Shown: piece by piece, positions 4,328-46,143 of the stretch
Position numbering within the stretch: position 1 is the first letter of the stretch
Layout: every line of letters starts with the position of its first letter
Virus record (IMG/VR): IMGVR_UViG_3300032331_003609
Span: 124,001-188,000 of that record
DNA length: 64,000 nucleotides
Reading direction: 5' to 3' (one strand)
Translations under genes and position numbers: made by a program
Notes under the pieces: model-generated
Seen by the model: the letters and a program-made list of their open reading frames with translations, nothing else
What the model was told of the DNA's origin: nothing
Database searches by the model: none

Positions 4328-4343
4328 ATACATTTTTTATTAC

Positions 4344-4373: not shown

Positions 4374-4384
4374 CTTAAAAAAAG

Positions 4385-19935: not shown

Positions 19936-20292
19936 ATGGAGTATGTTAAAAACAAAGATCTAAAAAGAGCGATATTAGAATCAAAAGAGAATGGAAAATT
20001 AACCGCAGAAACGGTTAAAATGTTTACTTTAATAGTAAATGGTCTTTCAAAAACAAAATCCTATCGGGATATTGAAGATAAAGAAGATTGCATAGCATTT
20101 GGAATGGAGGATTTAATTAAATATTGGGACAGATTTGATCCAGCTAAATCCGATAATCCATTTGCATTTATTTCACAAATTGCCAAAAACGGAATGCAAA
20201 AAGGTTGGAAAAAAATACATTCAACCAGGTCTATAAAAACCATCCCCTTTTCTAGACTTACAAGGGATGATAATCAAAATTATAATGTCTAA
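19936..20292 (+). CDS. gp55: Late-transcription sigma factor, T4 gp55-like
   Basis: YVKNKDL...LIVNGLS...SY...EDCI..G.E.LIKY...FDP.KSDNPFAFISQIA.NG matches the gp55 pattern (YVNNKEL...LIAEGLS...NFD..K..NPHAYITQ). Confidence 0.85.
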   Translation: MEYVKNKDLKRAILESKENGKLTAETVKMFTLIVNGLSKTKSYRDIEDKEDCIAFGMEDLIKYWDRFDPAKSDNPFAFISQIAKNGMQKGWKKIHSTRSIKTIPFSRLTRDDNQNYNV

Positions 20293-22946: not shown

Positions 22947-24680
22947 ATGGCAGGATTCATTGACAATTTTTCACAGAGTAACCCAAACATGGGGCGTATA
23001 CTCAAAGCCGTAAGTAAAATCGGAAGCTTCGGAATGGAGTATAAAGATCTTGTTGTGAAAAATTCTCAAGCAATTGGGGTTTCAGAAGCAATGATGAGAC
23101 AAAAATTAGCATTAACAGATTCTGATGAGGATTTTATTTTTAGCCTTGCAGCTGCAGATACCACTAGTAGAAAATACATTGCTTATTTTGATAAAGATTA
23201 TCCATACAAAAGAGATTTTTTAAGAAGCTTTGCACTTAATGCCGAGATAGAATGGATTTTAGACATCCTTGCTGATGAAGCTATAGTTTATGATGACAGA
23301 AATTTTTGCTGCAGTCTATCACTGGTTAATATGGATCTAAAGGATGAAATAGCAGACTCATTGAGGGAGAACTTTAGAAAGATCTATGTCTCCCATGGAT
23401 TTAACAACGGAATTTCAGCTTGGCAGTATTTTAGACAATTTTTAATAGATGGATTTTTATCTTTTGAAATAGTTTATTCAGATGATGGAAAACAAATAGT
23501 AGGATTTAAAGAATTAGATCCAGTTTCATTGACCCCATCTGTAGAGAGAAACCCTGGAGGACAAACTGTTCAAATATGGTATCAGTACTATGGAGACAGT
23601 GTTAGAGAAAGAAAGCTATATGATGCTCAGGTCATATATGTTTCTTTTGCAAATGGTAATGGCACAAGCAGAACAAGTTATGCTGAAAGATTAATTAGAT
23701 CCCATAATCTTCTAAAGATAATGGAGCATACCAGAATCATTTGGAATGTTATGAATGCTTCTTTCCGATTGAAGATGACTATCCCGGTTGGTTCTAGATC
23801 TCCTCAAAAAGCAAAAGAGACATTAGGGGAATTGATGAACATGTATAAGGAGGATATTAAACTTAATACTGATTCCGGAGAATTAAGTATTAACGGACGT
23901 CCAAATTTACAATTTTATAAGAACTATCTTTTCCCTGTCCAAGGAGGAGAATCACCTAAAATAGAGACTATTAATAATGCAGGGCCAAACTTAAATGTTA
24001 TAGATGCTGTGGTTTATTTCTTCAATAAATTAAAAGCAGATTCTAAGATACCATTTAATAGATTCGCTGCTAGATCTGGTGGAACCGTAGGAACATATAA
24101 GATAGGAGCAGAATCTGCAGAAAGGGATGAAATCAGATATAATAAATTCATTAATAGAATTAGATCAATCTATCAAGAGATCATACTAAAACCATTATGG
24201 ATTCAGATGACTTTGGATTATCCTGAACTTGATAAGGATTCTATATTTAGATCCCAATTAGGGCTTAAATTTAACTCCGATAATCAGTTTGGTGAATCTA
24301 AAGAGATAGAACAACTAATTAAGAAAATAGATTTTATAGCAGGACTTTCTGAAATTAAAGAAAAGAAAGGCGAAGAAGAACTTCCTTATTTTAGCCAGGA
24401 TTTTCTTATAGATAAATTTTTAGGATTGACCAACGAAGATAGAAGGGTTAATAATATTTACAAGAAAAAGGAGGAGGAGGAAGGCAAAGCAGCAGCTGCA
24501 ATTTCAGGATCTGCTACACCAGCACCAGCAGGTGGAGGTGACACAGCAACTCCAGCAGCAGAAACTGGAGGCGATGAAGCAGCACCAGCAGCTGAAGCCC
24601 CTGCGGAAGAAGCACCAGCAGCAGAAGCCACACCAGCACCAGCACCAGCAGCAGCAGCAACAGAGACTGAAGCACCTTAA
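22947..24680 (+). CDS. gp20: Portal vertex protein, T4 gp20-like, paralog B with Ala/Pro/Glu-rich tail
   Basis: Same motifs as paralog A along the full length (RDEIRYNKFI.RIR); C-terminal PAAEAPAEEAPAAEA tail. Confidence 0.9.
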   Translation: MAGFIDNFSQSNPNMGRILKAVSKIGSFGMEYKDLVVKNSQAIGVSEAMMRQKLALTDSDEDFIFSLAAADTTSRKYIAYFDKDYPYKRDFLRSFALNAEIEWILDILADEAIVYDDRNFCCSLSLVNMDLKDEIADSLRENFRKIYVSHGFNNGISAWQYFRQFLIDGFLSFEIVYSDDGKQIVGFKELDPVSLTPSVERNPGGQTVQIWYQYYGDSVRERKLYDAQVIYVSFANGNGTSRTSYAERLIRSHNLLKIMEHTRIIWNVMNASFRLKMTIPVGSRSPQKAKETLGELMNMYKEDIKLNTDSGELSINGRPNLQFYKNYLFPVQGGESPKIETINNAGPNLNVIDAVVYFFNKLKADSKIPFNRFAARSGGTVGTYKIGAESAERDEIRYNKFINRIRSIYQEIILKPLWIQMTLDYPELDKDSIFRSQLGLKFNSDNQFGESKEIEQLIKKIDFIAGLSEIKEKKGEEELPYFSQDFLIDKFLGLTNEDRRVNNIYKKKEEEEGKAAAAISGSATPAPAGGGDTATPAAETGGDEAAPAAEAPAEEAPAAEATPAPAPAAAATETEAP

Positions 24681-29048: not shown

Positions 29049-29975
29049 ATGACAGAACTAACAGAATTAAATCTACAATCCATTTTAAATTCGCCGGATT
29101 ATAGGTTATCAACAGAAAAGAATTTTAACCAAATACAGGAAGCTATAGATTTGCTTCAATCTGCATTTGGTATTCAATTCGAGCCCAATCCCGCTATAAA
29201 TTCACAAAATGCATCATTTGCAATAGGGGTGCTAAAGGGTAATTCAGTTAAACTTCCACTAACAGGAGCAACTAAGATTAGTCTAGATGGAACAAACGGG
29301 GGAATAACTGGATCTTCTATAAATGTTTCTAAAAATTCTTATGTTGGTGGAGATCTTTTGCTTTATAATGATTCTGGTAGTGACGGTAGAATTAAATTCT
29401 CGGTGGACAAAGTTAATGATGAGATTAAGGTACCAGAGGTTGGTCAAATAAGATTTACAGGTAGCGCATTTCAGGGATATGCAGTTCAAGATGAGGTTTC
29501 TTCTAAATTTTCTTTCACTATAGGATCTACAGGAAGTGGAAATTTCACATTATCTTATGCTGGGTCTGCGATTTTAACAATAGCTTGGCAAGGAACAGCG
29601 CATTCAACCGCTAATAAAATAGTTTCTGAAATAGCAGATCTCTCTGATATAGCAAATGCAAACGGACCGGCAATAAAGGCATCATCTTCAATAAATACAG
29701 TAACCATCGAATCGTTACCTGGATTTGCATCAGCAATGAATAGTGTTGCAGTTTCAGTATCTGCTTCGGGTATGACAATTACGCCTTCCTCAGGTAATAT
29801 GACGGGAGGTATAGATGGAACAGCGAGATGGGTAAATTTCTTTAACGGTGAAACTGTTCTTTACACACCGGGTACACCTAGTAGTTGGAATGGTACAGCA
29901 CCTACAACCTTACAAGGAGCTATAGACAGATTAGCGGCATTAGTTAAAACATTAAACAGCGGAACCGGGGCTTAA
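29049..29975 (+). CDS. Probable virion structural protein (beta-rich, fibre/vertex-like)
   Basis: Late promoter; G/S/T-rich; C-terminal WNGTAPTTLQGAIDRLAA helix. Confidence 0.65.
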   Translation: MTELTELNLQSILNSPDYRLSTEKNFNQIQEAIDLLQSAFGIQFEPNPAINSQNASFAIGVLKGNSVKLPLTGATKISLDGTNGGITGSSINVSKNSYVGGDLLLYNDSGSDGRIKFSVDKVNDEIKVPEVGQIRFTGSAFQGYAVQDEVSSKFSFTIGSTGSGNFTLSYAGSAILTIAWQGTAHSTANKIVSEIADLSDIANANGPAIKASSSINTVTIESLPGFASAMNSVAVSVSASGMTITPSSGNMTGGIDGTARWVNFFNGETVLYTPGTPSSWNGTAPTTLQGAIDRLAALVKTLNSGTGA

Positions 29976-34517: not shown

Positions 34518-34533
34518 CATAGCACACACTATG

Positions 34534-34541
34534 GATATATA
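34534..34541 (+). promoter_or_regulatory. Late promoter GATATATA
   Basis: 15 nt before GTG 34557. Confidence 0.65.
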
Positions 34542-34556
34542 CAATAAAATATCCGG

Positions 34557-35303
34557 GTGGTCAATCGTATTAAAAATTTTAAACAGTGGATTTTAAATGA
34601 GGGTGAATTCTATCAGAATGAGCTTAATACCCTTTTTTGGACCAATTCTCAGTTTGATCCCTCTATAAGAGAAAAGCTACTTCAGATCGCTAATGAATTT
34701 TATCAAACGTTCAAATTAGAAATCCCAATCTCCGATATTCAATTAACTGGATCTTTAGCTAACTATAACTGGACACCTAAGTCAGATCTTGACGTTCACG
34801 TCCTAATAGATTTTTCTAAACTTAATCCAGATATTGCTTTAGTTAAAAAGGGAATAGACGGACAAAGATTTATCTGGAACTTAAGACATAATATAGTTAT
34901 GAGAGGACATGATGTTGAATTATATCTTCAAGACGTAAACGAGCCTCACATAGCTTCTGGTCTATTTTCTCTTTTAAATAACGAATGGATAAGAATCCCT
35001 AAGTATAATCCGCCCCAAATAGATGAAATGGATGTGCAAAAGAAGTTTGAGGGAATAGTAAATGATATAGATCAATTAAATGCTAATCTTGAAAGCGGAA
35101 GTTCAGCTATATCTCCGAGGGAGCTTTATGACCATTCAGAAAAGGTTAAATCTAGAATCATGAAAATGAGAAAAGAGGGTCTTGCAGAGAGGGGGGAATT
35201 CTCTGTAGAAAATTTAGTGTTTAAAAAGCTCAGAAACGAAGGATATATACAGAATCTTATCGACCTAATATCCAGGTCATACGAGAAAATTTATAACGAA
35301 TAA
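34557..35303 (+). CDS. Pol-beta superfamily nucleotidyltransferase with capsid-targeting-like N-terminus
   Basis: LTGSLANYNW...SDLDVH (GS..DxD) and DVELY; N-terminus IKNFKQWILNE. Confidence 0.8.
   Translation: MVNRIKNFKQWILNEGEFYQNELNTLFWTNSQFDPSIREKLLQIANEFYQTFKLEIPISDIQLTGSLANYNWTPKSDLDVHVLIDFSKLNPDIALVKKGIDGQRFIWNLRHNIVMRGHDVELYLQDVNEPHIASGLFSLLNNEWIRIPKYNPPQIDEMDVQKKFEGIVNDIDQLNANLESGSSAISPRELYDHSEKVKSRIMKMRKEGLAERGEFSVENLVFKKLRNEGYIQNLIDLISRSYEKIYNE
35242..35249 (+). promoter_or_regulatory. GATATATA inside the NTase 3' end, possible promoter of 35315..37840
   Basis: Exact motif 65 nt upstream of the next start. Confidence 0.4.
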
Positions 35304-35314
35304 AAACCAAAAAG

Positions 35315-37840
35315 ATGTCAGGAATTTACAAAGGATACAATCCTATTTTCGAATCAATGAAGCAAGAGCTTTTTGAGGAGGAAACTAAAATAGACGTAGA
35401 TGCACTTATTAGAGCTATCTACGACACTTTTGTTAACCTAATAGTTAATGGAACAGACGAGGCAGTTAAAACTCCTGATGGATTTAAAGCATACATGGAA
35501 AAGGCTTTACAAGCCAGCTCTTTAAATGGTATTCAGGCTGAATTTGAAAAAAGAATAGATTTAATGGCTGCTACTGATAAAAGTCAAGCAGAAGCATTAA
35601 ACCAATCTAGATCCTATATTGGACAATTATTCTCATCATTAAAATCTGCAGTAGGTGAAGATTCCAAAGGTCTACAAAAAGCTATAGATAAAATGACATC
35701 TTTAATGGGATCTACAATAACTAGTTTTCAATCAGTTCAGGTTGAACTTCAAAAGAACGAAAGCTTAGTTAGCAGATACTTAATGGAAGATAATGAGCAA
35801 TTAACAGGAGAGGAAGCAGATTCTGAAGATGGATTAGCAGATAAATGGTATACCCAATTATCTAAAAATCTTTTAGACAGCGCAACGTCTTTTAAAGGAG
35901 AAACAGCATCTGCCATGGCTAGCAAAAATTTAGCTGGCAATTCCGAGGTTCAGAATTTTTCTCAATCTTCTCAGCAATATCTGGAGCAAGCAAAGCAATT
36001 AGCAATATCAGGGGGTAGGAGAGGATTATTTCAAACAGGAAAACTCCAAACAGCTTCAGGTCCTATGAAAGCTAAAGATTATAGAGTAAAGGCTCAAAAT
36101 CTTGTCAATGAGATAATCAGACAAAGAGAAGAATTTAGAAAATTAAATTACAAACTATCTAATATTCCTGCACCAACAAATCCAATCGTGGTTTGCCCAA
36201 CAGGTATGGCGTTTGATGTAGCAAAAAATGCTTGCGTATTTGTTACCGTTCCTGTAGTTAATACAGGAGGAGGAGGCGGGGACACTAAACCACCAAGGCC
36301 AAAGCCAACACCAGTTACAACTGGATGTACTTTTCCAGTTGCTATAGGAGCATCTAAATGCTCGGAGGTAGCAGCACTTCAAGGTAAATTGATTAGTATG
36401 GGATCTTGTATGGCTGATATCTTAAATGCAGCAGGGGGAGCAGATGGAAGATATGGTAAAGTAACAGCTAAGTTAGCAAACATCACTTATGCTTATATGA
36501 TGAAGTCAAATTCATTTAATGCAGCAGGAGAATTAACCCAAGAAATGTATAATGCTATAATGGCAGGAGGCCAGGTAATATACCAACAGCCACCAACAGC
36601 AGTGAAAGATTCATTAGACGTTTCTAAAGTTTTAGAAAACAAAACATTTGAAAAAGAACATCAAACAGGGACACCAGTTTTATCATTTGGTGATTTCTCT
36701 AAGATCCTAACAGAAGCTGTCTATTTAACTGAAGATGCAGGTATTCCTAATACATCAAGAAGCATAGCATCTTGTATATGTTCAACATATCAATCTGGAA
36801 ATATAGATCCAAATTGCTTCTCAATTGTCCCAGTACCAGTTCCAAACCCTACAGGAGGAACAGGAGCAACAGGAGGAACAGAGCCAATACCGGGTCAAGC
36901 AGATTGGAAAGGACTTAAATATGTTAATAGTGGATCTTATCCGGTTTCATTCGACGAAAGTCTTTTAAGTTTCTGGACCAAAGAAATAATAATTGATGCT
37001 TTAACATTCTGGGCACCAGGAGGAACATACGCTCTAAAAGCAGGAGCAACGGGTCTTAAATCATTAGGTATCAAGGGAGCCTCTAAAGCTGGAATGACAA
37101 AATTAGCTACTAAATTGGCAGCTAGCGCATCAACTAAAGCAGCTACACTAGGAACTGAAAAAGTAGCTTCTAAATTAGCTAACGTTTCTGCAGGATATTT
37201 TGCTAAATATGGTAGAATTCCTATCGCAAAGAGAACAGCAGCTGGACTTCTTGGAGGAACGGTTGGTGGTGCATTCTTTGACTTCATAGCGGGAAGAGAC
37301 ACTTTTGTTATCACATCAGTAGAAGGATTTGTAGAAAGAAACATGATAATGGGAATAGCTAAGGGTCTGACAAATACACTTGATGGATACTGCAGTGATG
37401 ACGATTGGGCATGCATAACACAGGTTTTAGCTATTACTAAAGGCGGTTGGACAGTGGACGAGGATGATAAAGCAGTATCAATTTGGTCACAGCTTAAGAA
37501 ATTCTACATGGAATCAGAAGGCGAGGAATTAATAGACGATATAAAGAGTGTTAAAGCTAAATTTGGAGATGTTGAAGGATATCCTAATGTTAAATCACTT
37601 TCTCCGCTTGCAAGTGTATCTGATCTTGATTGGGATTTAGCAAAAGCTGAGACTAATAGATTTGTTGATGCTCTTGAAAGAAACGAATCTAAGCTAGCGG
37701 AAAACCTTGCTAAACTTCCTGAAAAGTACGTTCAAGCATTCGTAGAGGGTGCTTATGATGAGATTGATGAAGAAGGAGAAGCAACTTCTGCTGACGGAAA
37801 AGAAGCTCCGGAGGAAAAAGCAATAAACAAACCTCAATAA
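35315..37840 (+). CDS. 841-aa putative internal/ejection protein with peptidoglycan-binding-like motif and hydrophobic Gly/Ala segment
   Basis: YNPIFES N-terminus; EVAALQ.KL...GADG.YG..T motif; AAGLLGGTVGGAFF segment. Confidence 0.7.
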   Translation: MSGIYKGYNPIFESMKQELFEEETKIDVDALIRAIYDTFVNLIVNGTDEAVKTPDGFKAYMEKALQASSLNGIQAEFEKRIDLMAATDKSQAEALNQSRSYIGQLFSSLKSAVGEDSKGLQKAIDKMTSLMGSTITSFQSVQVELQKNESLVSRYLMEDNEQLTGEEADSEDGLADKWYTQLSKNLLDSATSFKGETASAMASKNLAGNSEVQNFSQSSQQYLEQAKQLAISGGRRGLFQTGKLQTASGPMKAKDYRVKAQNLVNEIIRQREEFRKLNYKLSNIPAPTNPIVVCPTGMAFDVAKNACVFVTVPVVNTGGGGGDTKPPRPKPTPVTTGCTFPVAIGASKCSEVAALQGKLISMGSCMADILNAAGGADGRYGKVTAKLANITYAYMMKSNSFNAAGELTQEMYNAIMAGGQVIYQQPPTAVKDSLDVSKVLENKTFEKEHQTGTPVLSFGDFSKILTEAVYLTEDAGIPNTSRSIASCICSTYQSGNIDPNCFSIVPVPVPNPTGGTGATGGTEPIPGQADWKGLKYVNSGSYPVSFDESLLSFWTKEIIIDALTFWAPGGTYALKAGATGLKSLGIKGASKAGMTKLATKLAASASTKAATLGTEKVASKLANVSAGYFAKYGRIPIAKRTAAGLLGGTVGGAFFDFIAGRDTFVITSVEGFVERNMIMGIAKGLTNTLDGYCSDDDWACITQVLAITKGGWTVDEDDKAVSIWSQLKKFYMESEGEELIDDIKSVKAKFGDVEGYPNVKSLSPLASVSDLDWDLAKAETNRFVDALERNESKLAENLAKLPEKYVQAFVEGAYDEIDEEGEATSADGKEAPEEKAINKPQ

Positions 37841-37844
37841 TAGA

Positions 37845-37852
37845 GATATATA
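37845..37852 (+). promoter_or_regulatory. Late promoter GATATATA of the protease-capsid operon
   Basis: 19 nt before ATG 37872. Confidence 0.7.
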
Positions 37853-37871
37853 GTAAAATAAATAAAATAGA

Positions 37872-39953
37872 ATGAGTCTTAACCCTGAATTCGTTTTGGT
37901 CTTGGAAAAATCTTCACATAACCTGAAGTCCGAGAAGAATGGTAACGAATATTATCTTGAAGGTATAGCAGCAGTGTTTGGTAAAGAGAATTCAAACCAA
38001 AGAATCTACGAGGAAAGAGAATATCTTCCCCATTTGCAATATTTAAAAGAAAAGATAGAACAAAAAAGATTAGTAGGTGAATTAGATCACCCTAAGGAAT
38101 TTGATGTGTCTTTAAAGAATATTTCACACCTAGTTGAAGAGCTTGCTTATGATCAAGAGAATAGAACTTTAAGAATTAAAGTTAGACTTTTAGATACACC
38201 AGCAGGTAAAATAGCTAAATCTTTAGTTGATGCTGGTATTCCAGTTTCTATCTCATCAAGAGCAGCAGGCAACGTGATGGAAAACAAAAAAGTACAAATT
38301 AAGAAGATTTTTACCTATGATCTAGTTGCTGATCCTGGATTTGAGAATGCTCAATTAGAAAGAGTTTACGAAAGCTATGGATACAATCTTAACGAAAAGT
38401 CAAAAAATGAATCCATTTTAAATGGTCTTCCTTTGATGAACGAAAGCTTAGGATTAGAAAATGATTCAAATTTTAAGATATATAGAATCAAAGATCAAGA
38501 TAAGATACAAAAGCTTCTAGATAAGGAGCCAAATAAGAGTTTAATCATGGAAAATAATTTCGTTACAGCGGAAGAAATGAATGGATATTCTAAACTAATC
38601 AAAAAAGAAATGGACACTATTAAAGGGTCTATTGAATCATTGAAAGGGATTAAAGAATCTTCCAAAATAACAGAATCATCTTCTCTTGAGGAAAGAGTTG
38701 GTAAGTTAGAAAAGTATGCTGATTATTTAGCAGAAAACCTAGAGGCATCTATTAAGTATGGTGAATACCTAGCTGAAAATTTAGAAGATTCAGTTTCTTA
38801 TTCTAAGTATCTTGCAGAGAACCTAGACAAATCTATTTCTTATGCAAAATATCTTGCTGAGCATTTAGATCACAATATCTCTTATTCTGAGTACATTGCA
38901 GAGAACGTTGACAACAACGTAACAGCAGTTAAAGGTCTAACAGAGAAAGTTGATCAATCTATTGCTTATGCAGAATATGTAGCAGAGAACGTAGACAAGA
39001 ACATTAAGTATAGCGAATACCTTGCTGAAAACTTAGATAAGAACATCTCTTATTCTGAGTATCTTGCTGAGAACGTAGATAAGAACATTTCTTATTCTGA
39101 GTACTTAGCAGAAAACCTAGATAAAGGTTTAGCTTATAGCGAATACTTAGCTGAGAAATTAGATAAGAACATTTCTTATTCTGAGTACTTAGCAGAAAAC
39201 CTAGATAAAGGTTTAGCTTATTCTGATTATCTTGGTGAGAACCTAGATAAGACAGTTCATTACAGTGAGTATATCGCTGAAAAATTAGCTAACAACATCA
39301 GCTATGCAGAATACATCGCTGAGTCTGTAAATGCAGCTTCAGGAACCGCAGAGGTAAAAGAAGCAGTAACAAAAGCAATTTCTGAAAACACAAGAACTTC
39401 AGGATATGCAGGAGATTACACAGAGATCTCTTCTAAAATTGACAATTTATTGAACACTGTCGGTAAACAAAAGACAGAAGAAATAGCAGAAAATAAGAAC
39501 TATCCTTTCTTAAAGCTTATGGGCGAACAAGGACAAAGAGAATTTTTATCACTGCACGAAGGCCAAAAACAAAAGGTCGCCAAATCCTTAAACGAAAACA
39601 ATTACTCATCCGAAAAAGAGGTAGTTGAAATTATGGGTAAAACTCTGAATGAGCAAAATCAATCCGGAGAAAAATTCCTAGATTTAATGCCAGAAAAATA
39701 CAAAACTACATGGGAGAATATGAATGAGTCTCAAAAGGCCTCTATATTAGCTCAAAGTAAGTTTCATAAATTGGATACTCCTTACCAAATCCAGAATTTC
39801 TGGGCTACAAGAGGTATTGCAGTTACCAAGGCAAATATCGAAAGAATAGACGAATCCCAAGAACAAATAACCGCAGCTCCTCAGCCAAAGGGAATATCTA
39901 GAGAATATTTAGATAATCTTTCTGAAGCTTTAGCTGTTAGGTTTAAAAAATAA
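37872..39953 (+). CDS. gp21: Prohead protease (gp21, U9 family) fused to gp22-like scaffold
   Basis: LEGIA...N.N.RIY, GELDHP, NISH, LDTPAGKIAK.L, ISSRA.G, TYDLVADPGF; then about 500 aa helical scaffold directly before gp23. Confidence 0.93.
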   Translation: MSLNPEFVLVLEKSSHNLKSEKNGNEYYLEGIAAVFGKENSNQRIYEEREYLPHLQYLKEKIEQKRLVGELDHPKEFDVSLKNISHLVEELAYDQENRTLRIKVRLLDTPAGKIAKSLVDAGIPVSISSRAAGNVMENKKVQIKKIFTYDLVADPGFENAQLERVYESYGYNLNEKSKNESILNGLPLMNESLGLENDSNFKIYRIKDQDKIQKLLDKEPNKSLIMENNFVTAEEMNGYSKLIKKEMDTIKGSIESLKGIKESSKITESSSLEERVGKLEKYADYLAENLEASIKYGEYLAENLEDSVSYSKYLAENLDKSISYAKYLAEHLDHNISYSEYIAENVDNNVTAVKGLTEKVDQSIAYAEYVAENVDKNIKYSEYLAENLDKNISYSEYLAENVDKNISYSEYLAENLDKGLAYSEYLAEKLDKNISYSEYLAENLDKGLAYSDYLGENLDKTVHYSEYIAEKLANNISYAEYIAESVNAASGTAEVKEAVTKAISENTRTSGYAGDYTEISSKIDNLLNTVGKQKTEEIAENKNYPFLKLMGEQGQREFLSLHEGQKQKVAKSLNENNYSSEKEVVEIMGKTLNEQNQSGEKFLDLMPEKYKTTWENMNESQKASILAQSKFHKLDTPYQIQNFWATRGIAVTKANIERIDESQEQITAAPQPKGISREYLDNLSEALAVRFKK
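38712..39341 (+). repeat. 15 tandem 42-bp (14-aa) repeats, consensus SYSEYLAENLDKNI
   Basis: Counted in translation from KYADYLAENLEASI to SYAEYIAESVNAAS; unit 6 is degenerate. Confidence 0.92.
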
Positions 39954-39968
39954 ACATTTTTATAGAAA

Positions 39969-41726
39969 ATGCAACTTATCAATCAACATGAAATCTATGA
40001 AACCTGGGCACCAATATTGGAAAGCAAAACAGGTATTCAAGAGAGAGGTAAATTAGACTGGTTAACTAAATACTGTCATTACCACTCATTAAACGAATCT
40101 GCCGGAGCGTATAACTCTTTAGGCGTATTAAACGGTATGGGCCAAGTATCTCCTGCTTCTAACGTAGGTTTATCTGGCGGTCCTGCTGGCTTTTATGCAG
40201 GCGGATCTTATTCTGGAACTGGTCTTGGTTCTGGCGATAAATTCCCTTCTCTTTTACCTTTAGCTATTCAAGTAGCTGCTAAAACAGTAGGTTTTGATAT
40301 CGTTCCAGTTATCCCAATGAGCGGTCCTACAGGCGTATTATCATACTTAGACTATGTTTACGCAGGTGGTAAATTATCTGGTACTGACTCTGTATCTCCA
40401 TACACAGCAAACACTCCAGATTTAATTAAAGTTCCAACAACAACAGCTTCTCCAGTTACTGGTTTAGCAGTAGGAACCACTTACCTTTTAGGTGCTTCTG
40501 GTCTTTCTTCAACAAAAGACTTAGACTCTGCAGGTGTAGGTGCTTTAGTAGCTGGTAAATTCGTCGGTAGTTCAAGAATCGATGGTTTCCCAATTTTCCA
40601 AGTGGTAGCATTAACTGTAGGTTTCTCTATTGCTGACGCAATCGGGGCAGACGCAGTTATTTACTCTGGTTCATATAATACAGGTACAAAGGTTTATACA
40701 ATCTCTGCAACAGTAGGATATGCAAACGGTGCTGCTCAATTAGTTAAAACTTTAGAAGATCACGTACAAGGATTTACTGGTTCTGGCGTTGCTAACGACG
40801 GTACATGGTCTGGTCCTTATGTAGACGGTACTAAAGCTTACGATCCAATGTCAAGAGGAACTGCAGAAGGCACTTACTTCAAGTCATTAGGTCTTTCTAC
40901 ATTCACTAAGTTTGTAGAGGCTGGTACATTCCAAGTTGCTGCTTCTGTTACAACTGAGCAAATCCAAGATTTGAACAAGCAATTCGGTATCGACGTAGTT
41001 TCTATGATCGAGAACGCACTTGTTAACGAGGTTTCTCAAGCGATCAACAAGCACATCTTATCTAGAGCATTTGCTTTAGGTTGGTCTAACCACTATGAAT
41101 TTGCAAACACCGAATTAGGTGGAGCATCTTCTGCTTCTCTAAACATCAATTTAAATATTGGTTCTGGTGGAGCTTCAACCGCATCTTTCATCGGTAAGGA
41201 CAATGGATCTTTAACAATCTATACTCCTGGCGATATTGCTACAGGCGGATACGAGAACCAATCAACTGTACAAAGAAGATTATTCTCAAGAATCTTGGCT
41301 GCTGCTAACGTAGTAGCAAACAGAGGAAGAAGAGGACCTGCTAACTTTATTGTTACTAACGCTCAGGTAGCTTCTGCTTTACAAGATATTTCACAATTCA
41401 CATTTGCTCCTTTTACAAACACGTTAACTCAAAATAACGGTACTTTATATCCAGTTGGTTCAATCGCTGGTATGACCGTTTATGTTGATCAAAACATGTC
41501 TTTTGGCGATACGAGAGTATTAGTTGGAAGAAAAGGTGCTGATGACGAACCAGGTATGAAATTTATGCCTTACATGATGGCTGAGTCAATTCAGACTATC
41601 TCTGAAGGTACAATGTCACCTAAAATTGCAGTTAAGTCTAGATACTCTTTAGTAGAGGCTGGACATCATCCTCAAACAATGTACTTATGCTTCAAAGCTA
41701 TAGTACCTGCAACTGGTATCGCTTAG
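39969..41726 (+). CDS. gp23: Major capsid protein, T4 gp23-like
   Basis: W.PIL, VGFDIVPV.PMSGPTG, Q.AA..T.EQIQDL...GID...., NF.V...VAS.L, G...G..VYVD, G.KF.PY, SRY.L; strong codon bias. Confidence 0.96.
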   Translation: MQLINQHEIYETWAPILESKTGIQERGKLDWLTKYCHYHSLNESAGAYNSLGVLNGMGQVSPASNVGLSGGPAGFYAGGSYSGTGLGSGDKFPSLLPLAIQVAAKTVGFDIVPVIPMSGPTGVLSYLDYVYAGGKLSGTDSVSPYTANTPDLIKVPTTTASPVTGLAVGTTYLLGASGLSSTKDLDSAGVGALVAGKFVGSSRIDGFPIFQVVALTVGFSIADAIGADAVIYSGSYNTGTKVYTISATVGYANGAAQLVKTLEDHVQGFTGSGVANDGTWSGPYVDGTKAYDPMSRGTAEGTYFKSLGLSTFTKFVEAGTFQVAASVTTEQIQDLNKQFGIDVVSMIENALVNEVSQAINKHILSRAFALGWSNHYEFANTELGGASSASLNINLNIGSGGASTASFIGKDNGSLTIYTPGDIATGGYENQSTVQRRLFSRILAAANVVANRGRRGPANFIVTNAQVASALQDISQFTFAPFTNTLTQNNGTLYPVGSIAGMTVYVDQNMSFGDTRVLVGRKGADDEPGMKFMPYMMAESIQTISEGTMSPKIAVKSRYSLVEAGHHPQTMYLCFKAIVPATGIA

Positions 41727-41828: not shown

Positions 41829-42941
41829 ATGAAGCTTATTGAAAATTTTAAATCATATAGTGATTGCAAAGAAGCATTAATAGAATCGTATGGTGATATT
41901 GATATTGCAAAAACCAAATTAATTAAAAAGGGATATTCATCGGATGATTTAGACGAAAGTTTAAATGCAATCAAAGAATCATTAGGCGATAAGATTATTA
42001 ACTTTTTTTCTAAAAATCTAGGGGGTGGTATTTCTAAAATAGACAGAATACTAAGAGATATAAAAGAAGAAGAAATTAGATTTATCAGGGACGAGCATGA
42101 AGCAGAATCTAAATTCTATAAATTAAGCACAGCACTAGGACAATTAAAAAGGGATAAAGCAGACAAGTCGGAAATGGATCAATATGTTATTAAATTGAAT
42201 AAGATTCAAAAATTAATAAGAGATTTAGTTTCTTCACACAGCTCTATTATGGATAGCCTAGAAAAACAAATAGATGTTCTAACTAATAAGAAGAATAGAA
42301 GAAGCGAGTACTATAACTTAAAAAGAGCAGAGGATGCTGTAGAGACTAAAAAACTAAGAGCAGAATTTAAAAAGAAGCTTATTAGTCAAGAAGATGATTC
42401 TGAGTACTTAAAAGATATTCAAAAGATTCTTGGAAATCCCAAAGATGCAGAGAAAGATTTAGAAAAAGCTAAGGAGAACCTAGCTAAAGAAAAAGGTGAA
42501 ATAGGAGCAAGCGACGAGGTTTCTAGAATGTCACCAGATAAGATAGAAAATATCTTGAGTGAATATCATAAAGAAATTATGGCTTCGCTCAAAGACGTTA
42601 AAGACTATACAGAAAAATCATTAGACAGGATTCAAGAGCTTTCTGATAATAAGAAAATGAATCAAGGAGCTTATAACAGTATGAAAAATACATTTGAATC
42701 TAAGATAAGTAAGATTTCTAAGTATGTTGAAGAAGCTAAGAGTAAAATATCACAAATAGGAACTTCCGATGAAGAGATAGGAGAAGATTCAAATAAAGCA
42801 ATAACTTATCTTTTGAACCTGGAAAAAGCAGTTACCAATATAAAGTATTATACTTGGCCAGCTGATGATCTTTCTAAAGAGAAAAAAGAGATTCAATCTG
42901 CTTTAGAAGTAGTAGAAGACGAAATACAAAAAGCAGCTTAA
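41829..42941 (+). CDS. Charged coiled-coil putative internal head protein
   Basis: MKLIENFKSY N-terminus; K/E-rich helical composition. Confidence 0.75.
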   Translation: MKLIENFKSYSDCKEALIESYGDIDIAKTKLIKKGYSSDDLDESLNAIKESLGDKIINFFSKNLGGGISKIDRILRDIKEEEIRFIRDEHEAESKFYKLSTALGQLKRDKADKSEMDQYVIKLNKIQKLIRDLVSSHSSIMDSLEKQIDVLTNKKNRRSEYYNLKRAEDAVETKKLRAEFKKKLISQEDDSEYLKDIQKILGNPKDAEKDLEKAKENLAKEKGEIGASDEVSRMSPDKIENILSEYHKEIMASLKDVKDYTEKSLDRIQELSDNKKMNQGAYNSMKNTFESKISKISKYVEEAKSKISQIGTSDEEIGEDSNKAITYLLNLEKAVTNIKYYTWPADDLSKEKKEIQSALEVVEDEIQKAA

Positions 42942-43768
42942 TGAAGAAGTACTCAGACTTCATATTGGACGATTCCCTTAATGAAGGTTTTCTAAAGAAC
43001 CTCTTTGGAAAAATAGGATCTTTCCTCAAGGGCAGTAAAAGATCTATTTTAGATAAGATTTCTAAAATGAAAGATGCCGAAAAGGAATTCATCAATAAAT
43101 CTGATGAATTAAATTATGATATCTTTTCTTCAGAACTAGGAAGAAACCAAGATCCAAATTCAAGACAAAGAGCATTGATGAGCAAAAGAGCACTTGAAGC
43201 TATAAGGCTTGCAAAAAATGGTGAAATAAATTTCATAGTAAAGGAAGTGAAAGAAATATGCGGTTCTGATCCTTCCCTTGCAAATTTTTACAATCAACAA
43301 AAAATGCTAGCAGACACAGAGCTTGCACAATATGCCTATGAGAAAGCCAAAAAATTTAAAGATAATGATTATGAGAGGGATTTTTATAATCAATGGAAAA
43401 CTTTAGACTCCGAGGTTCAAAAGGTTAAATTTGACAGTTTTGAAGATGAAGAAGACACTGTTGCTAATTTAGGAATGTTTGATCTTCCGTTAAAAGAATT
43501 TGTTAGTCAAATACAAGGATTACCTAAATCTGACATAGCTCAATTATTAAGCGATGCAAATGATTTAAAATGGAAAATTGCTGACGATTATAGAAAAAAA
43601 TCAATGAGCATTCGCGAATTAAAAAATAGATCATATAGATCCGGCGATATATCCTCTTTTAATTTTTCAAGAGAGAAGTTTGAAGAAATGAAAAATATAT
43701 ACAGAAAGGCTAATGTCTCTATAGACAATAAAATATCAATGCTAAAAAACAGATTAAAGAATATATAA
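42941..43768 (+). CDS. Charged coiled-coil putative internal head protein, related to 41829..42941
   Basis: MKKYSDFILDDSLNE|G; a FF/FL-...-I..I...E.EFI pattern is shared with the preceding gene. Confidence 0.75.
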   Translation: MKKYSDFILDDSLNEGFLKNLFGKIGSFLKGSKRSILDKISKMKDAEKEFINKSDELNYDIFSSELGRNQDPNSRQRALMSKRALEAIRLAKNGEINFIVKEVKEICGSDPSLANFYNQQKMLADTELAQYAYEKAKKFKDNDYERDFYNQWKTLDSEVQKVKFDSFEDEEDTVANLGMFDLPLKEFVSQIQGLPKSDIAQLLSDANDLKWKIADDYRKKSMSIRELKNRSYRSGDISSFNFSREKFEEMKNIYRKANVSIDNKISMLKNRLKNI

Positions 43769-43779: not shown

Positions 43780-46143
43780 ATGAAAAATAACATCTATAAC
43801 CCACTTTTTGAAAGCTTGCTTAAAAAAGTAAACGATTACGAAAATCCACAAGGCATCTCAGAACAAGATGGTGCGGTGAAAGGAACTATTTTTAGCGACT
43901 ATATGAAAGCTATGTCTCAATTAGGTTCTAAATTGGTTGCACAATATGCCAATGCTATTCAGACCTATCCTAAGACTGCTGTTAAGACTGAATACATGAA
44001 AACCTTTACTGATAAATTAAAGGCCATTGAAAGCTCTATAGATATTACAAAAACACCATCTATCCAATTGGATGCTTTATTTAACAATGTTAAAACTGAG
44101 GCAACAGCATTTTTTGGATTGGGTGCTAAAGAAGATAAAAATCTTGTTAAATACCTAGAGCCATGGAGAGATGCATTTAGAACAGGATTTCAACTTTATA
44201 CCCAAGCATTTAAAAGCTTAATGGAATATGTTAAAAAACAAGAAGAGAGTGGCCAAGCTAAAATTAGCGAAACTGAAAAGGGTATGATGAAAGCAGGTGT
44301 TAGTAAATTTATTGCATCACTTACTGCATCTTTTGAAAAAAACAAGACAATCACAGATACTAAATGGGGAGAACCCGTTGTTGGTGAGTCTTTAGTTAGA
44401 GATAACTCAGTTATAGAAAAACTAATTCAAAACAAAATATGCGTTGATTTTAACACCTTTAATACAGTAGTTAATGAAGCTAAAGAGGATAGAATTGCAA
44501 GAAGAGCAGCAAAATCAGCAAGGGTTAATATAGAAGTATTACAGGCAAACATTTCAAATGTTCTAAACCAAATAGGAGGGAGACTTGGAGATCCGGCTAA
44601 AGCTAATTTTAAATCTCTAGCAATGGCTCCTGAATTTAACAAGATTGCAAACACTCTAGTTTCTATCCAAGACGAATTGTCAATTGATAGGTCAGAATTA
44701 AAGAATGTTCAATTTGATGATTTAGATAAACAAATTGCCAATCTAACGGATCTATTCAAGACTAAAAAAGATTCTTATGATAAGACATATTCTGAAGAAG
44801 AAAAAACACTAAGAAGTTCTAAAACATTAGAAATTGCAACACCAGAGGTTGCCAAGTTTATTGCAGACGGAGATGCTCAATTCGATGCATTATCAGATCT
44901 GGCTCAAAACGGAGCTAATCTTTTCTCTGCAGATATTGAAAAAGCAAAACAAGATAAATCACAAGCAGATAAAATAAAGGGAGAATCTCAACCAAAGAAT
45001 CCAGGCAAGAAAGACGGAGAGGTACAAAAAGGTCAAGACGGAGCAGATTGGAAATGGGACGCTAAAGCAAAGGTTTGGAATAAAGTAGAAGTTGCTGATC
45101 CTGTTTCTACCTCAAATATTAAAATTGCATCACCGATTAAAAAAGGTGCTAAAGGTGATCAGGTTAAAGCAGTTCAGCAATTGATCATGGATAAAATGGG
45201 TACAAAATTGAAAGATGTACCTCAGTATAAGAAATTTGCTAAATACGGAGCAGATGGTATATTCGGAGGATCCACAGCATCTTTAGTTCCTGCGATGAAA
45301 GGGGCGTTAGGGTTAAAAGACACTTCTTCTGATATTACACAGGAATTGGTTGATAAATTATCAGCAGTTATTAAAGAATCATTTGTTTTCGAACAAGATT
45401 TCGATATGGACGTTTTTAATAAAATCATAGGAAGCGGAGGGGGAGGAGACACCAAACCAGCAAAGGGAAGTTCGGGTGCAGGATCACCTATAAATTCTGC
45501 AGCTTTTAAATGTATTAAAGCTAAGGAAACTACAGAATTTGCAATGAAGGGAGGAAAAGCAGTGGTAACAAGGGCAACTACTGGAAATATTCACGAATTT
45601 AAAGCAGACGGAAGTTATAGAATTTACATAAAAAGTGAGGATAAATGGAAAAGGGGTGTTTGGAGTTGTGCGGGTAATTCTTATCAAGCAACAATAGAAG
45701 GAGGCGAAGTCTATCTTGGTGATTATCAGAATTTTAAAAGTGAAATTGATAAATCGCAAAAAGTAGCAGCAGAAGCAGCAGCTAAAAAAGCAGCAGAACA
45801 GATTGCTAGTGCTAGAGTAATTTGTCAGATTCTCCTTCAAGCAATGGCAGGTGCTAGTGAAGATGAGGGAACAGTTTATAAAACATTCCAGGATAAAATC
45901 ACAACCAAGGAGATGTTTAATACTGTTGAGGCCCAGTGGAATTCGCTTTGGCCAAGTAAAGCTGATATGAACGGCACGATGATATCAGCTAAATCAAAAA
46001 GTTGGGAAGAACTTAAGAAAGCGTGTGCATTTACTGGAACAAAGAATGGATTTAGCTTTAGAAACATATTTACACAGTTTTTTAGTTCTTCTGAAATAGC
46101 TAGATTGAATCAATATTTACCAGCAGGGGTTAAAGCAATTTAA
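43780..46143 (+). CDS. 787-aa putative internal/ejection protein with peptidoglycan-binding-like motif
   Basis: YNPLFES N-terminus; IKKGAKGDQVKAVQQ...YGADGIFG..T motif. Confidence 0.72.
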   Translation: MKNNIYNPLFESLLKKVNDYENPQGISEQDGAVKGTIFSDYMKAMSQLGSKLVAQYANAIQTYPKTAVKTEYMKTFTDKLKAIESSIDITKTPSIQLDALFNNVKTEATAFFGLGAKEDKNLVKYLEPWRDAFRTGFQLYTQAFKSLMEYVKKQEESGQAKISETEKGMMKAGVSKFIASLTASFEKNKTITDTKWGEPVVGESLVRDNSVIEKLIQNKICVDFNTFNTVVNEAKEDRIARRAAKSARVNIEVLQANISNVLNQIGGRLGDPAKANFKSLAMAPEFNKIANTLVSIQDELSIDRSELKNVQFDDLDKQIANLTDLFKTKKDSYDKTYSEEEKTLRSSKTLEIATPEVAKFIADGDAQFDALSDLAQNGANLFSADIEKAKQDKSQADKIKGESQPKNPGKKDGEVQKGQDGADWKWDAKAKVWNKVEVADPVSTSNIKIASPIKKGAKGDQVKAVQQLIMDKMGTKLKDVPQYKKFAKYGADGIFGGSTASLVPAMKGALGLKDTSSDITQELVDKLSAVIKESFVFEQDFDMDVFNKIIGSGGGGDTKPAKGSSGAGSPINSAAFKCIKAKETTEFAMKGGKAVVTRATTGNIHEFKADGSYRIYIKSEDKWKRGVWSCAGNSYQATIEGGEVYLGDYQNFKSEIDKSQKVAAEAAAKKAAEQIASARVICQILLQAMAGASEDEGTVYKTFQDKITTKEMFNTVEAQWNSLWPSKADMNGTMISAKSKSWEELKKACAFTGTKNGFSFRNIFTQFFSSSEIARLNQYLPAGVKAI

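What the first reader, a model, noticed from the sequence alone, without database searches (positions are those of the whole stretch)
34557..35303. Late, probably virion-packaged nucleotidyltransferase
It has an intact GS-x-DxD-x-E pol-beta active site, a late promoter and a capsid-targeting-like leader. An NTase injected with the genome would parallel T4 Alt and could NMPylate host proteins or RNA, or interfere with nucleotide-signalling defences. The substrate is unknown.
Basis: partly seen in the sequence, partly recalled or inferred. Interest (0 to 1): 0.6.

Follow-up and report, generated by a model that had tools for sequence, protein, structure and literature searches.

The report
Late, head-packaged phage nucleotidyltransferase
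A large freshwater T4-like phage encodes an intact but uncharacterised nucleotide-transferring enzyme that is wired for late-only synthesis and carries a cleavable head-targeting-type leader. It is therefore probably loaded into the capsid and delivered with the DNA, and a relative was found in purified virions of a cyanophage.

Summary
The ORF at 34557-35303 (+, 248 aa, GTG start) is real. It has an invariant pol-beta nucleotidyltransferase (NTase) catalytic set: G65-S66, D77-x-D79, E121. It belongs to a very large, virus-only, uncharacterised family (PHROG 36119; 3,734 clusters at 50% identity).

The "late promoter" is confirmed. [GA]ATATATA is a genome-wide, strand-specific motif that precedes the tail sheath, tail fibre, neck, portal and prohead protease genes. 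The genome encodes a gp55-like late sigma factor.

New here: the motif lies in the 5' arm of a covariation-supported hairpin whose 3' arm abuts a conserved non-ATG start codon. This is the T4 gene e/soc/49/I-TevI design, which limits translation to late transcripts.

The 15-residue leader ends in ILNE|G. The major capsid protein (MCP) propeptide and neighbouring head proteins carry the same LNE|[GSA] site. A hydrophobic-x-Glu site in the leader is enriched across the family.

Gene order exo-NTase-840-aa protein-protease-MCP is conserved in relatives. The S-CREM2 homologue, ORF156, was detected in CsCl-purified virions.

The fold matches pol-beta NTases in general (minimal NTases (MNT), FAM46, aminoglycoside NTases (ANT) and cGAS/DncV-like NTases (CD-NTase), all Z 7 or below). 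It matches no characterised subfamily, so the substrate remains unknown.

Packaging in this phage is inferred, not shown.

The parts
34533..34541 (+). Late-promoter-like motif GGATATATA, an instance of the genome-wide [GA]ATATATA[ACG], 15 nt before the start codon
   Evidence: k-mer enrichment and strand bias. The same motif precedes the sheath, fibre, neck, portal and protease genes. It is conserved upstream of the gene in 16 relatives.
34532..34555 (+). Hairpin at the translation initiation region. 5' arm 34532-34538 (contains the promoter motif), loop 34539-34548, 3' arm 34549-34555 abutting the GTG. The MFE fold also pairs the GUG itself with an upstream CAC.
   Evidence: MFE -9.5 kcal/mol. 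This is the strongest hairpin of this type among about 50 motif sites. In 16 relatives 84% of cells are paired, against 21-61% when the partner is slid; 5 of 10 pairs change on both sides; 0 of 500 shuffles reach the covariation score.
34557..35303 (+). NTase gene, 248 aa plus stop, GTG start. The start is non-ATG in all 16 relatives whose DNA was read.
   Evidence: Family PHROG 36119, E 1e-36. 1,389 and 3,734 homologues.
34557..34601 (+). Predicted 15-residue N-terminal propeptide (M1-E15) ending I-L-N-E, with cleavage expected before G16. A candidate capsid-targeting and processing leader.
   Evidence: Low pLDDT for residues 1-18. LNE[GSA] is enriched at N-termini and present in the MCP propeptide. 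[LIVM]xE is in 48 of 75 family leaders against 26.4 +/- 3.6 in shuffles. The T4 precedent is a 10-19-aa CTS cut after Glu (PMC9026906).
34611..35015 (+). Pol-beta-type NTase domain (aa 19-153) with G65-S66 (34749-34754), D77-x-D79 (34785-34793) and E121 (34917-34919)
   Evidence: Alignments. Domain model pLDDT 95.6. VIA-align hits: 2rff Z 7.0, 1ylq 6.7, FAM46B 6.6, HEPN-MNT 5.8, ANT(4') 5.7, CdnE 5.6.
35016..35300 (+). C-terminal three-helix bundle (aa 154-248) carrying the conserved R205...G213-E-x-S-x-E-N-L-x-F-K-x-L-R226 block
   Evidence: Model. Conservation. Only generic helical-bundle matches.
35315..37840 (+). 841-aa protein of unknown family immediately downstream (11-nt spacer). Its N-terminus, Y-N-P-I-F-E|S, has a protease-type site. 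Candidate internal head or core protein.
   Evidence: No Pfam, PHROG or NCBIfam hit. Position and the [IV][FY]E|S site are conserved in relatives. An RNA-library contig spans 35152-35320.
37872..39953 (+). gp21-type prohead protease (Peptidase_S77) fused to a repeat-rich scaffold-like region. The presumed processing enzyme.
   Evidence: Pfam 7.6e-9, phrog_207 1.9e-35. Preceded by the late motif.
39969..41726 (+). gp23-type major capsid protein with the candidate propeptide boundary H-S-L-N-E|S-A-G at residue 45
   Evidence: phrog_138 and Gp23. The site is identical in L007 and L009.
19936..20292 (+). gp55-like late sigma factor, the likely reader of the late motif
   Evidence: phrog_234, E 6.5e-16. 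tblastn against S-CREM2 gp153, E 1.5e-8.

Best explanation
The gene encodes a catalytically competent pol-beta-fold nucleotidyltransferase that is made only late in infection. Transcripts reading through from the upstream repair genes fold a hairpin that buries the weak GTG start. Transcripts that begin at the late promoter inside the hairpin's 5' arm lack that arm and can be translated.

The protein's 15-residue N-terminal leader takes it into the assembling prohead core. There the gp21-type protease cuts after I-L-N-E, as it cuts the capsid protein and the neighbouring core proteins. The mature enzyme (about residues 16-248) stays in the head in low copy number and leaves with the DNA at the next infection. 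It then transfers a nucleotide monophosphate to a host target before any phage gene is expressed. The target is most likely a protein or an RNA end.

Shown: the ORF, the catalytic motifs, the fold, the promoter motif class, the hairpin with covariation, the conserved synteny, and the homologue in virions.
Inferred: cleavage, packaging in this phage, ejection, activity and target.
For: Catalytic motifs are invariant across hundreds of homologues. The model is confident and shows the NTase fold.

The late motif is genome-wide and sits before structural genes. A gp55-like sigma factor is present.

The hairpin, with the promoter in its 5' arm and a non-ATG start at its 3' arm, is conserved with compensatory changes in 16 relatives. 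This matches the documented T4 mechanism for genes e, soc, 49 and I-TevI (PMC3014915).

The leader ends in LNE|G, the same site as in the MCP propeptide. The head proteins at 42941 and 17430 carry it too. [LIVM]xE in the leader is enriched family-wide, 48 of 75 against 26.4 +/- 3.6. T4 CTS propeptides are 10-19 aa long and are cut after Glu (PMC9026906).

The order exo-NTase-840 aa-protease-MCP is conserved down to about 58% identity.

S-CREM2 ORF156, a homologue (E 9e-38), is in the virion proteome together with ORF154 and ORF155. All three are in one block behind a canonical TATAAATA late promoter.

The family is virus-only.
Against: There are no proteomic or activity data for this phage.

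The S-CREM2 homologue is only 32% identical and was seen with 6 peptides. Low-level carry-over of an abundant late cytoplasmic protein cannot be excluded.

In S-CRM01, Cr30 and Molly, and in most of the more distant loci, the gene is not in the head module.

Hydrophobic-x-Glu is common by chance: 75 of 264 N-termini in this genome have [LI]xE. The N-terminal 'NFK' resemblance to other proteins is largely AT-rich codon composition. The LNE[GSA] motif was chosen after seeing the data.

Two thirds of the family representatives are fusions with varied partners and no MuF-type head anchor.

The transcription start site is predicted, not mapped.
Confidence: 0.5

Rival explanations
1. A cytoplasmic late enzyme that is not packaged. 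It acts inside the infected cell late in the cycle, for example tailing or repairing RNA or tRNA, or modifying a nucleotide or small molecule. The leader is simply an N-terminal helix of the fold, and the virion detection in S-CREM2 is carry-over.
For: Structural neighbours include RNA-tailing enzymes: FAM46B Z 6.6, Tailor 5.7, TUT1 and PAP about 5.2. The best Pfam hit, below threshold, is the MTPAP-like palm. Rare fusions to a 2H phosphoesterase, a PolyA_pol head domain, a kinase and NUDIX point to RNA or nucleotide metabolism. The contexts in Cr30, S-CRM01 and Molly are among replication or nucleotide genes.
Against: The S-CREM2 virions were CsCl-purified, and the adjacent ORF154 and ORF155 were also detected. 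The position at the head of the head block is conserved. The family-wide Glu-ending leader sits just before the domain and is of low confidence in the model rather than packed on the fold.
Confidence: 0.25
2. A packaged enzyme whose substrate is inside the head or is the phage genome itself. It might nucleotidylylate DNA ends or head proteins rather than a host target.
For: The same packaging evidence as for the best explanation. The gene lies beside DNA-repair genes: UvdE, Fpg/Nei and a 3'-5' exonuclease.
Against: A gp2-like DNA end protector is already encoded at 20779-21351. The protein has no recognisable DNA-binding domain. Repair-gene synteny is limited to one clade.
Confidence: 0.1
3. 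A DNA-repair polymerase or terminal transferase that works with the upstream UvdE, Fpg/Nei, exonuclease and ligase genes as a minimal Pol X-like gap filler.
For: It lies immediately downstream of UvdE-like, Fpg/Nei-like and exonuclease genes, in the same orientation. That order is conserved in relatives.
Against: It has its own late promoter plus a hairpin that blocks translation of read-through transcripts from those very genes. It lacks Pol X lyase, fingers and thumb domains, and no Pol X structure is among the listed matches. The linkage is lost outside the clade.
Confidence: 0.07
4. An anti-defence enzyme acting on nucleotide second messengers. It would be CD-NTase-like, making a decoy signal or consuming NTP pools.
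For: The top Foldseek hit is CdnE (E 9.6e-4), and several CdnD, CdnC and CdnB hits follow.
Against: TM-scores are only 0.2-0.28 and Z is 5-6.3, no better than for ANT, MNT or FAM46. The C-terminal three-helix bundle is unlike the CD-NTase/OAS helical domain. No Cap-type partner genes are nearby.
Confidence: 0.05

Closest known systems
T4 internal head proteins and Alt (CTS-targeted, gp21-processed, ejected with the DNA)
   Same: A short N-terminal propeptide ending in hydrophobic-x-Glu. A gp21-type protease in the genome. Late expression. The gene sits beside head-core genes. A homologue is present in virions. The cargo is a diverse enzyme or defence-related protein behind a conserved type of leader (PMC3012670, PMC9026906).
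   Different: The fold and chemistry differ: a pol-beta NTase, not an ADP-ribosyltransferase (Alt) or a small basic inhibitor (IPI). There is no sequence relation. Packaging and cleavage are inferred here.
Synechococcus phage S-CREM2 ORF156 (listed as a hypothetical protein in the virion proteome)
   Same: A true homologue: 32% identity over 218 aa, E 9e-38, with the catalytic residues kept. It is late-transcribed behind TATAAATA. It was detected in virions.
   Different: It sits in a different genome region, next to gp55, a cytidylyltransferase and the primase. Its leader is different (M-K-K-L-I-S-E...). It was not recognised as an NTase in that paper.
Minimal nucleotidyltransferases (MNT; PDB 2rff, 1ylq, HEPN-MNT 8xeh)
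   Same: The best structural and profile matches of the catalytic domain: Z 7.0, 6.7 and 5.8, profile E 0.012. They share the G-S...S-D-h-D-h motif style.
   Different: MNTs are single-domain proteins of about 100-140 aa paired with a HEPN gene. This protein has an extra 95-aa three-helix bundle and no HEPN neighbour. The scores are in the generic range.
Aminoglycoside and lincosamide NTases (ANT(4'), AadA, AAD(9), ANT(6), LinB)
   Same: The same two-part architecture of about 250 aa, an N-terminal NTase plus a C-terminal helical domain. Foldseek E 1.7e-3 to 2e-2. One homologue is annotated as such in DSL-LC02.
   Different: TM is only about 0.27 and Z about 6. There is no Pfam match to ANT families. 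The family is virus-only.
Legionella DrrA/SidM AMPylation domain
   Same: The best sequence-profile hit in the PDB with alignment A1 (E 0.004), over the helix-GS-DxD segment. A sub-threshold Pfam SidM_N hit. It is a delivered protein-AMPylating effector, so the biology is analogous.
   Different: The score is marginal and covers about 70 residues. It does not appear among the structural neighbours.
T4 gene e / soc / 49 / I-TevI translation-initiation hairpins
   Same: The late promoter is encoded in the 5' strand of a hairpin that sequesters the start region, so only late-promoter transcripts are translatable (PMC3014915). The geometry here is the same and is backed by covariation.
   Different: The promoter consensus differs (ATATATA-type rather than TATAAATA). 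There is no Shine-Dalgarno sequence. The start is GTG or TTG. The transcript ends are not mapped.

Membership tests
Pol-beta-like nucleotidyltransferase superfamily (NTP_transf_2 clan) | hG[GS] motif followed after 9-13 residues by [DE]h[DE]h | tested here: met
   G65-S66, then 10 residues, then D77-L-D79-V. G65, D77 and D79 are invariant or nearly so in alignments of 17, 60 and 99 sequences.
Pol-beta-like nucleotidyltransferase superfamily (NTP_transf_2 clan) | Third carboxylate on the neighbouring beta strand | tested here: met
   E121 (V-E-L-Y-x-Q-D) is 90% or more conserved and lies on strand 118-126 of the model.
Pol-beta-like nucleotidyltransferase superfamily (NTP_transf_2 clan) | Alpha-beta-alpha-beta-alpha-beta palm fold | tested here: met
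   Domain model pLDDT 95.6. 12 of the top 15 VIA-align rows are pol-beta NTases, Z 5.2-7.0.
Pol-beta-like nucleotidyltransferase superfamily (NTP_transf_2 clan) | Pfam model above the gathering score | tested here: inconclusive
   This protein scores below the cut-offs: MTPAP-like 21.5 against 27, NTP_transf_2 19.3 against 21. However, 12 of 99 homologues match NTP_transf_2, down to E 1e-9.
Pol-beta-like nucleotidyltransferase superfamily (NTP_transf_2 clan) | NTP-dependent nucleotidyl transfer | not testable with these tools
   Needs an enzyme assay.
MNT of HEPN-MNT toxin-antitoxin pairs | Single-domain protein of about 100-140 aa with an adjacent HEPN gene | tested here: not met
   The protein is 248 aa with an added three-helix bundle. 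Its neighbours are an exonuclease and an 841-aa protein with no HEPN hit.
CD-NTase (cGAS/DncV-like) | CD-NTase/OAS-type C-terminal helical domain, full-length structural match, and a Cap effector operon | tested here: not met
   Foldseek TM 0.18-0.28 and Z 5-6.3 over the palm only. No effector genes nearby.
Class II CCA-adding enzymes / poly(A) polymerases | PolyA_pol head domain (PF01743) | tested here: not met
   No hit for this protein. One of 99 homologues has it, as a separate fused domain.
Aminoglycoside nucleotidyltransferases (ANT) | NTase plus helical-domain architecture with a specific match to ANT families | tested here: inconclusive
   The architecture is alike. The matches are weak: E 1.7e-3 to 2e-2, TM about 0.27, Z about 6. 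No Pfam ANT family is matched.
T4-type CTS-bearing internal head proteins (a functional class) | N-terminal propeptide of about 7-19 residues ending in hydrophobic-x-Glu | tested here: met
   M1-E15 ends in I-L-N-E|G. The feature is conserved in relatives and enriched family-wide. The definition is from PMC9026906.
T4-type CTS-bearing internal head proteins (a functional class) | gp21-type prohead protease and late (gp55) transcription in the same phage | tested here: met
   Peptidase_S77 at 37872-39953. gp55-like sigma at 19936-20292. The late motif lies upstream.
T4-type CTS-bearing internal head proteins (a functional class) | Detected, in processed form, in purified virions | not testable with these tools
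   Only a homologue has data: S-CREM2 ORF156, 6 peptides and 15.2% coverage. Its N-terminus was not reported.
T4 gene e-type late-only translation hairpin | Stem sequestering the start region, with the late promoter in the 5' strand | tested here: met
   The definition is from PMC3014915.
T4 gene e-type late-only translation hairpin | Mapped late 5' ends inside the hairpin and untranslated read-through RNA | not testable with these tools
   The RNA-library contigs cover only 35152-35320 and parts of the next gene.

The most novel reading that the evidence does not exclude
This virus-only NTase family is a widespread 'first-strike' cargo of large phages. It is loaded into heads through a protease-cleaved leader and injected with the DNA. 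It then AMPylates (or otherwise NMPylates) and so disarms host defence or translation factors before any phage gene is expressed. For example, it could act as a delivered mimic of MNT antitoxins against HEPN-type abortive-infection RNases.
Probability: 0.12. Interest if true: 0.8.

Novelty: new variant of a known kind. Interest (0 to 1): 0.55.

Why it matters
Packaged, injected proteins are how T4-type phages act on the host before any transcription. The known cargoes are an ADP-ribosyltransferase and small anti-restriction proteins. A pol-beta nucleotidyltransferase as cargo would add a new chemistry, NMPylation, to that first wave.

The family has thousands of sequence clusters and is found only in viruses: huge phages, Lak phages, T4-like cyanophages, and flavobacterial and Caulobacter phages. 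No member has been characterised.

The work gives directly testable predictions: a mature N-terminus at G16, late-only translation through a hairpin, and D77/D79-dependent transfer. It also names cultured carriers (S-CREM2, S-CRM01, Cr30, Molly) in which to test them.

Tried and rejected
- Megablast of the 7-kb surroundings against phage records found nothing. NCBIfam gave no hit.
- The full-length VIA-align search was swamped by generic matches to the C-terminal helical bundle. The catalytic domain was therefore folded and searched alone.
- BFVD and ESM Atlas structure searches returned only the same uncharacterised viral family.
- The fusion-partner survey of 99 long homologues gave only scattered hits: GNAT 3, 2H phosphoesterase 2, M23 2, and NUDIX, ADK and PolyA_pol 1 each. 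No MuF-type anchor was found, so there is no consistent functional clue.
- Neighbour clustering in 80 loci found no conserved partner outside the clade.
- The resemblance of the leader's 'I-x-N-F-K' to N-termini of the MoxR/VWA operon and of 41829 was rejected as evidence. AT-rich tripeptides are generally enriched at N-termini in this genome. Only the LNE|[GSA] site, and the 15-nt identical leader DNA shared with one other gene, were kept.
- A terminator reading of the hairpin was rejected because no T-run follows it.
- Complex prediction of the protease/scaffold with the NTase gave no verdict.
With A1 it found a single MAG contig.
- The S-CRM01 virion paper (PMC4185292) is not held, so g125 could not be checked.
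- The Atu_ph07 paper was irrelevant.
- One search was a mistyped reference and returned an error.
Only table 11 was used.
Full report
**What the window is.** The window is bases 124001-188000 of a 244,850-bp viral record, estimated 86% complete, with about 34% G+C. It holds the core of a T4-like phage:
- a gp55-like late sigma factor (19936-20292), a gp4-like head-closure protein and a gp2-like DNA end protector;
- two tandem portal paralogues, a DNA ligase, a clamp loader and an exonuclease;
- UvdE-like, Fpg/Nei-like and 3'-5' exonuclease genes;
- then the target ORF, an 841-aa protein of unknown family, a Peptidase_S77 prohead protease fused to a repeat-rich scaffold-like region, and a gp23-type major capsid protein (MCP).

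Near-identical DNA occurs in freshwater and lake metagenomes from about ten independent studies.

**The observation.** The ORF lies exactly at 34557-35303 (+), 248 aa, with a GTG start.
- Catalytic set: G65-S66, D77-L-D79 and E121 are present. They are invariant or nearly so in alignments of 17 close, 60 diverse and 99 multidomain homologues.
- Pfam: this sequence gives only sub-threshold hits (MTPAP-like palm 21.5 bits, NTP_transf_2 19.3). Twelve of 99 homologues reach NTP_transf_2, down to E 1e-9.
- Model: AlphaFold2 gives a confident model (pLDDT 90). It has a disordered N-terminus (1-18), an alpha/beta NTase domain (19-153) and a three-helix bundle (154-248).

**Which NTase?** No characterised subfamily stands out.
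- Foldseek on the PDB gives weak, mixed hits: CdnE 9.6e-4, AAD(9), ANT(6), CdnD, LinB and AadA, with TM 0.2-0.28.
- The catalytic domain folded alone (pLDDT 95.6) and searched exhaustively gives MNT-type minimal NTases first (2rff Z 7.0, 1ylq 6.7). FAM46B (6.6), HEPN-MNT (5.8), Tailor, ANT(4'), CdnE and OAS2 (about 5.6) follow. All of these are in the generic range.
- Sequence profiles touch 2rff and the DrrA AMPylation domain only marginally.

The protein is therefore a member of the pol-beta NTase superfamily and of no characterised subfamily.
- Its own family is PHROG 36119, function unknown.
- The family is very large: 1,389 hits in one search and 3,734 clusters at 50% identity in the other.
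- It is essentially viral. All Atlas and BFVD relatives are Uroviricota or uncultured phages. A pattern-limited scan of 185,579 species genomes found one MAG contig.
- Carriers include huge phages of 630-735 kb, Lak phages, Maribacter phages Molly and Colly, cluster-C T4-like cyanophages and Caulobacter phage Cr30.
- Two thirds of the best representatives are longer fusions with varied, mostly unknown partners.

**The promoter.**
- An unbiased k-mer count of the 70 nt before 264 ORFs shows ATATATAA in 31 upstream regions against 1.7 expected, and GATATATA in 28 against 1.6.
- The core occurs 72 times on the + strand and 18 on the - strand, following gene orientation. It typically lies 4-35 nt from a start codon.
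- Genes behind it include the tail sheath, a tail fibre, a neck protein, the first portal gene and the prohead protease.
- With the gp55-like sigma factor present, it is the local equivalent of the T4 late promoter.
- The target has GGATATATA at 34533-34541, and all 16 relatives whose DNA I read keep it.

- The first half of the promoter motif is the 5' arm of an inverted repeat, and the 3' arm ends at the start codon.
- The minimum-free-energy fold (-9.5 kcal/mol) also pairs the GUG itself. It is the strongest fold of this kind among about 50 motif sites.
- Across 16 relatives, 84% of cells pair, against 21-61% when the partner is slid. Five of ten pairs change on both sides. No shuffle of 500 reaches the covariation score.
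- The outer stem differs in sequence between lineages but stays complementary.
- No T-run follows the hairpin, so it is not a terminator.
- The start codon is GTG or TTG in all 16 loci, while 83% of ORF calls in this genome start with ATG.

This is the arrangement documented for T4 genes e, soc, 49 and I-TevI. Read-through early transcripts fold and are not translated. [quoted passage not shown] By inference, the NTase is made only from late-promoter transcripts, and weakly. This fits a protein that is harmful early in infection or needed only for assembly.

**The leader.**
- Residues 1-18 precede the conserved core (Y-x-x-E-L-N-P-x-F-W) and are of low confidence in the model.
- They end in I-L-N-E|G. 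LNE[GSA] occurs 11 times in the predicted proteome, 7 of them in the first 50 residues, where 17% of residues lie. The binomial p is about 7e-4 by my arithmetic, with the caveat that I chose the motif after looking at the data.
- The seven include the MCP (H-S-L-N-E|S-A-G at residue 45, identical in two relatives), the 275-aa head-module protein at 42941, the 749-aa protein at 17430 and the NTase.
- The other head-module proteins have conserved hydrophobic-x-Glu sites near their N-termini: 841 aa, I-F-E|S; 370 aa, L-I-E|S.
- One unrelated 272-aa protein elsewhere in the genome shares the leader down to 15 identical nucleotides, behind its own late motif.
- Family-wide, among 75 representatives at 50% identity or less with an N-terminal domain, 48 have [LIVM]xE in the leader. 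Composition-preserving shuffles give 26.4 +/- 3.6, with a maximum of 38 in 1,000. The Glu is most often three residues before the domain.
- In T4, proteins targeted to the head core carry 10-19-residue propeptides, the capsid targeting sequences (CTS), which gp21 removes after a Glu. This is regarded as a general way for T4-like phages to load diverse proteins (PMC9026906, PMC3012670).

I discarded a broader resemblance (I-x-N-F-K) as evidence, because AT-rich tripeptides are generally enriched at N-termini here.

**Position and experimental support.**
- The order UvdE-(Fpg)-exo-NTase-840 aa-protease-MCP is kept in 17 viral contigs and two further metagenome contigs, down to about 58% identity.
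- In more distant phages the context differs: near the terminase in one clade of about 23 loci, and near replication or nucleotide genes in S-CRM01, Cr30 and Molly.
- The decisive outside evidence is the published virion proteome of Synechococcus phage S-CREM2. ORF156 (126012-126725) was detected in CsCl-purified virions with 6 unique peptides and 15.2% coverage, and was listed as a hypothetical protein (PMC10665884, Table 3). It is a clear homologue of the target: 32% identity over 218 aa, E 9e-38.
- The adjacent ORF154 (cytidylyltransferase) and ORF155 are virion proteins too. The three genes follow a terminator and a canonical TATAAATA late promoter.
- A lake metatranscriptome library contains a 169-nt contig, 99% identical, that spans the 3' end of the NTase gene and the start of the 841-aa gene. 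This is compatible with co-transcription, but DNA carry-over in the library cannot be excluded.

**Explanation and its limits.** I commit, at about 0.5, to the following model.
1. The enzyme is an active NTase made only late in infection.
2. Its leader takes it into the prohead core, and the prohead protease trims it after E15.
3. It is kept in the head in low copy number and ejected with the DNA.
4. In the newly infected cell it NMPylates a host protein or RNA end.

The steps from cleavage onward are inferred.

The main rival, at about 0.25, is a non-packaged late cytoplasmic enzyme, for example one that tails or repairs RNA. The weaker rivals:
- An intra-capsid or DNA-end role. A gp2-like end protector is already encoded.
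- A repair polymerase working with the upstream genes. The hairpin specifically blocks translation of read-through RNA from those genes, and no Pol X features or matches were found.
- A CD-NTase-like signalling role. Similarity to CD-NTases is no more specific than to MNT, ANT or FAM46.

A complex prediction of the protease/scaffold with the NTase gave no verdict and is not used.

**Novelty.** Delivery of enzymes through a CTS is known, and so is the late-only hairpin. New here are three things: the virus-only family is recognised as an intact NTase; a member is linked to a virion proteome; and in this clade the gene combines the T4-style late-only translation switch, a protease-type leader and a fixed place at the head of the head-assembly block. 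I rate it a new variant of a known kind, of moderate to good interest because the predictions are directly testable in cultured phages.

Noticed in passing
window 21351-22943 and 22947-24680: Two tandem portal-protein paralogues, both phrog_213 (E 6e-65 and 5e-59). Only the first has the late motif upstream. This is unusual for a T4-like head.
   Followed up: no
window 37872-39953 (repeats at 38961-39299): The prohead protease (Peptidase_S77) is fused in one 693-aa ORF to a long array of 14-residue repeats (42-nt period, Y-S-E-Y-L-A-E-N-L-D-K-N-I-S). It appears to be a protease-scaffold fusion.
   Followed up: partly
whole genome G000; e.g. window 37841-37871, 21320-21350: Only 18 of 264 ORFs have a Shine-Dalgarno-like motif. 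The late motif often ends only 4-7 nt before the ATG, so many late mRNAs would be nearly leaderless. This hints at a host with SD-independent initiation.
   Followed up: partly
G000:C1 99140-103086 (- strand; locus L003 4141-8086): An operon of a 272-aa unknown protein, a MoxR-type AAA ATPase and a DUF2201 metallopeptidase/VWA protein. The first shares the NTase leader (N-F-K-x-F-L-N-E-G-x-F), including 15 identical nucleotides, behind its own late motif. Its annotated TTG start is probably wrong; the real start is probably M23.
   Followed up: partly
window 35315-37840 and 43780-46143: The 841-aa and 787-aa proteins of unknown family share an N-terminal Y-N-P-[IL]-F-E-S motif and a G-G-G-G-D-T-K-P linker. 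They are candidate paralogous internal head or ejection proteins.
   Followed up: partly
window 41829-42941 and 42941-43768: Two head-module proteins (370 and 275 aa) with no family hit have conserved N-terminal protease-type sites (L-I-E|S and S-L-N-E|G) in this phage and two relatives. They are likely further core or internal proteins.
   Followed up: partly
window 46744-48177 (+) and 48174-49661 (-): A protein starting M-C-G-I-L (glutamine-amidotransferase-like nucleophile) lies next to a convergent RimK/ATP-grasp-like 'S6 glutaminyl transferase' gene. One BFVD relative of the NTase is fused to an amidoligase. This may be a peptide-tagging module.
   Followed up: no
locus L006 (S-CREM2) 2500-4672: ORF154, ORF155 and ORF156 of S-CREM2, all detected in virions, form one block behind a terminator and a canonical CTATAAATAG late promoter. 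The block lies just downstream of the gp55 gene.
   Followed up: yes
window 29049-29975 upstream region: The late motif, with a weaker hairpin of the same design (-6.9 kcal/mol), also precedes the block that leads into the UvdE, Fpg and exonuclease genes. At least part of the repair cluster may therefore be late-transcribed too.
   Followed up: no
window 1042-1323: A late motif is followed directly by a strong hairpin and a T-run (-14.9 kcal/mol) before a TTG 'ORF' of 93 aa. This is more likely a short promoter-terminator unit or a small RNA than a gene.
   Followed up: no
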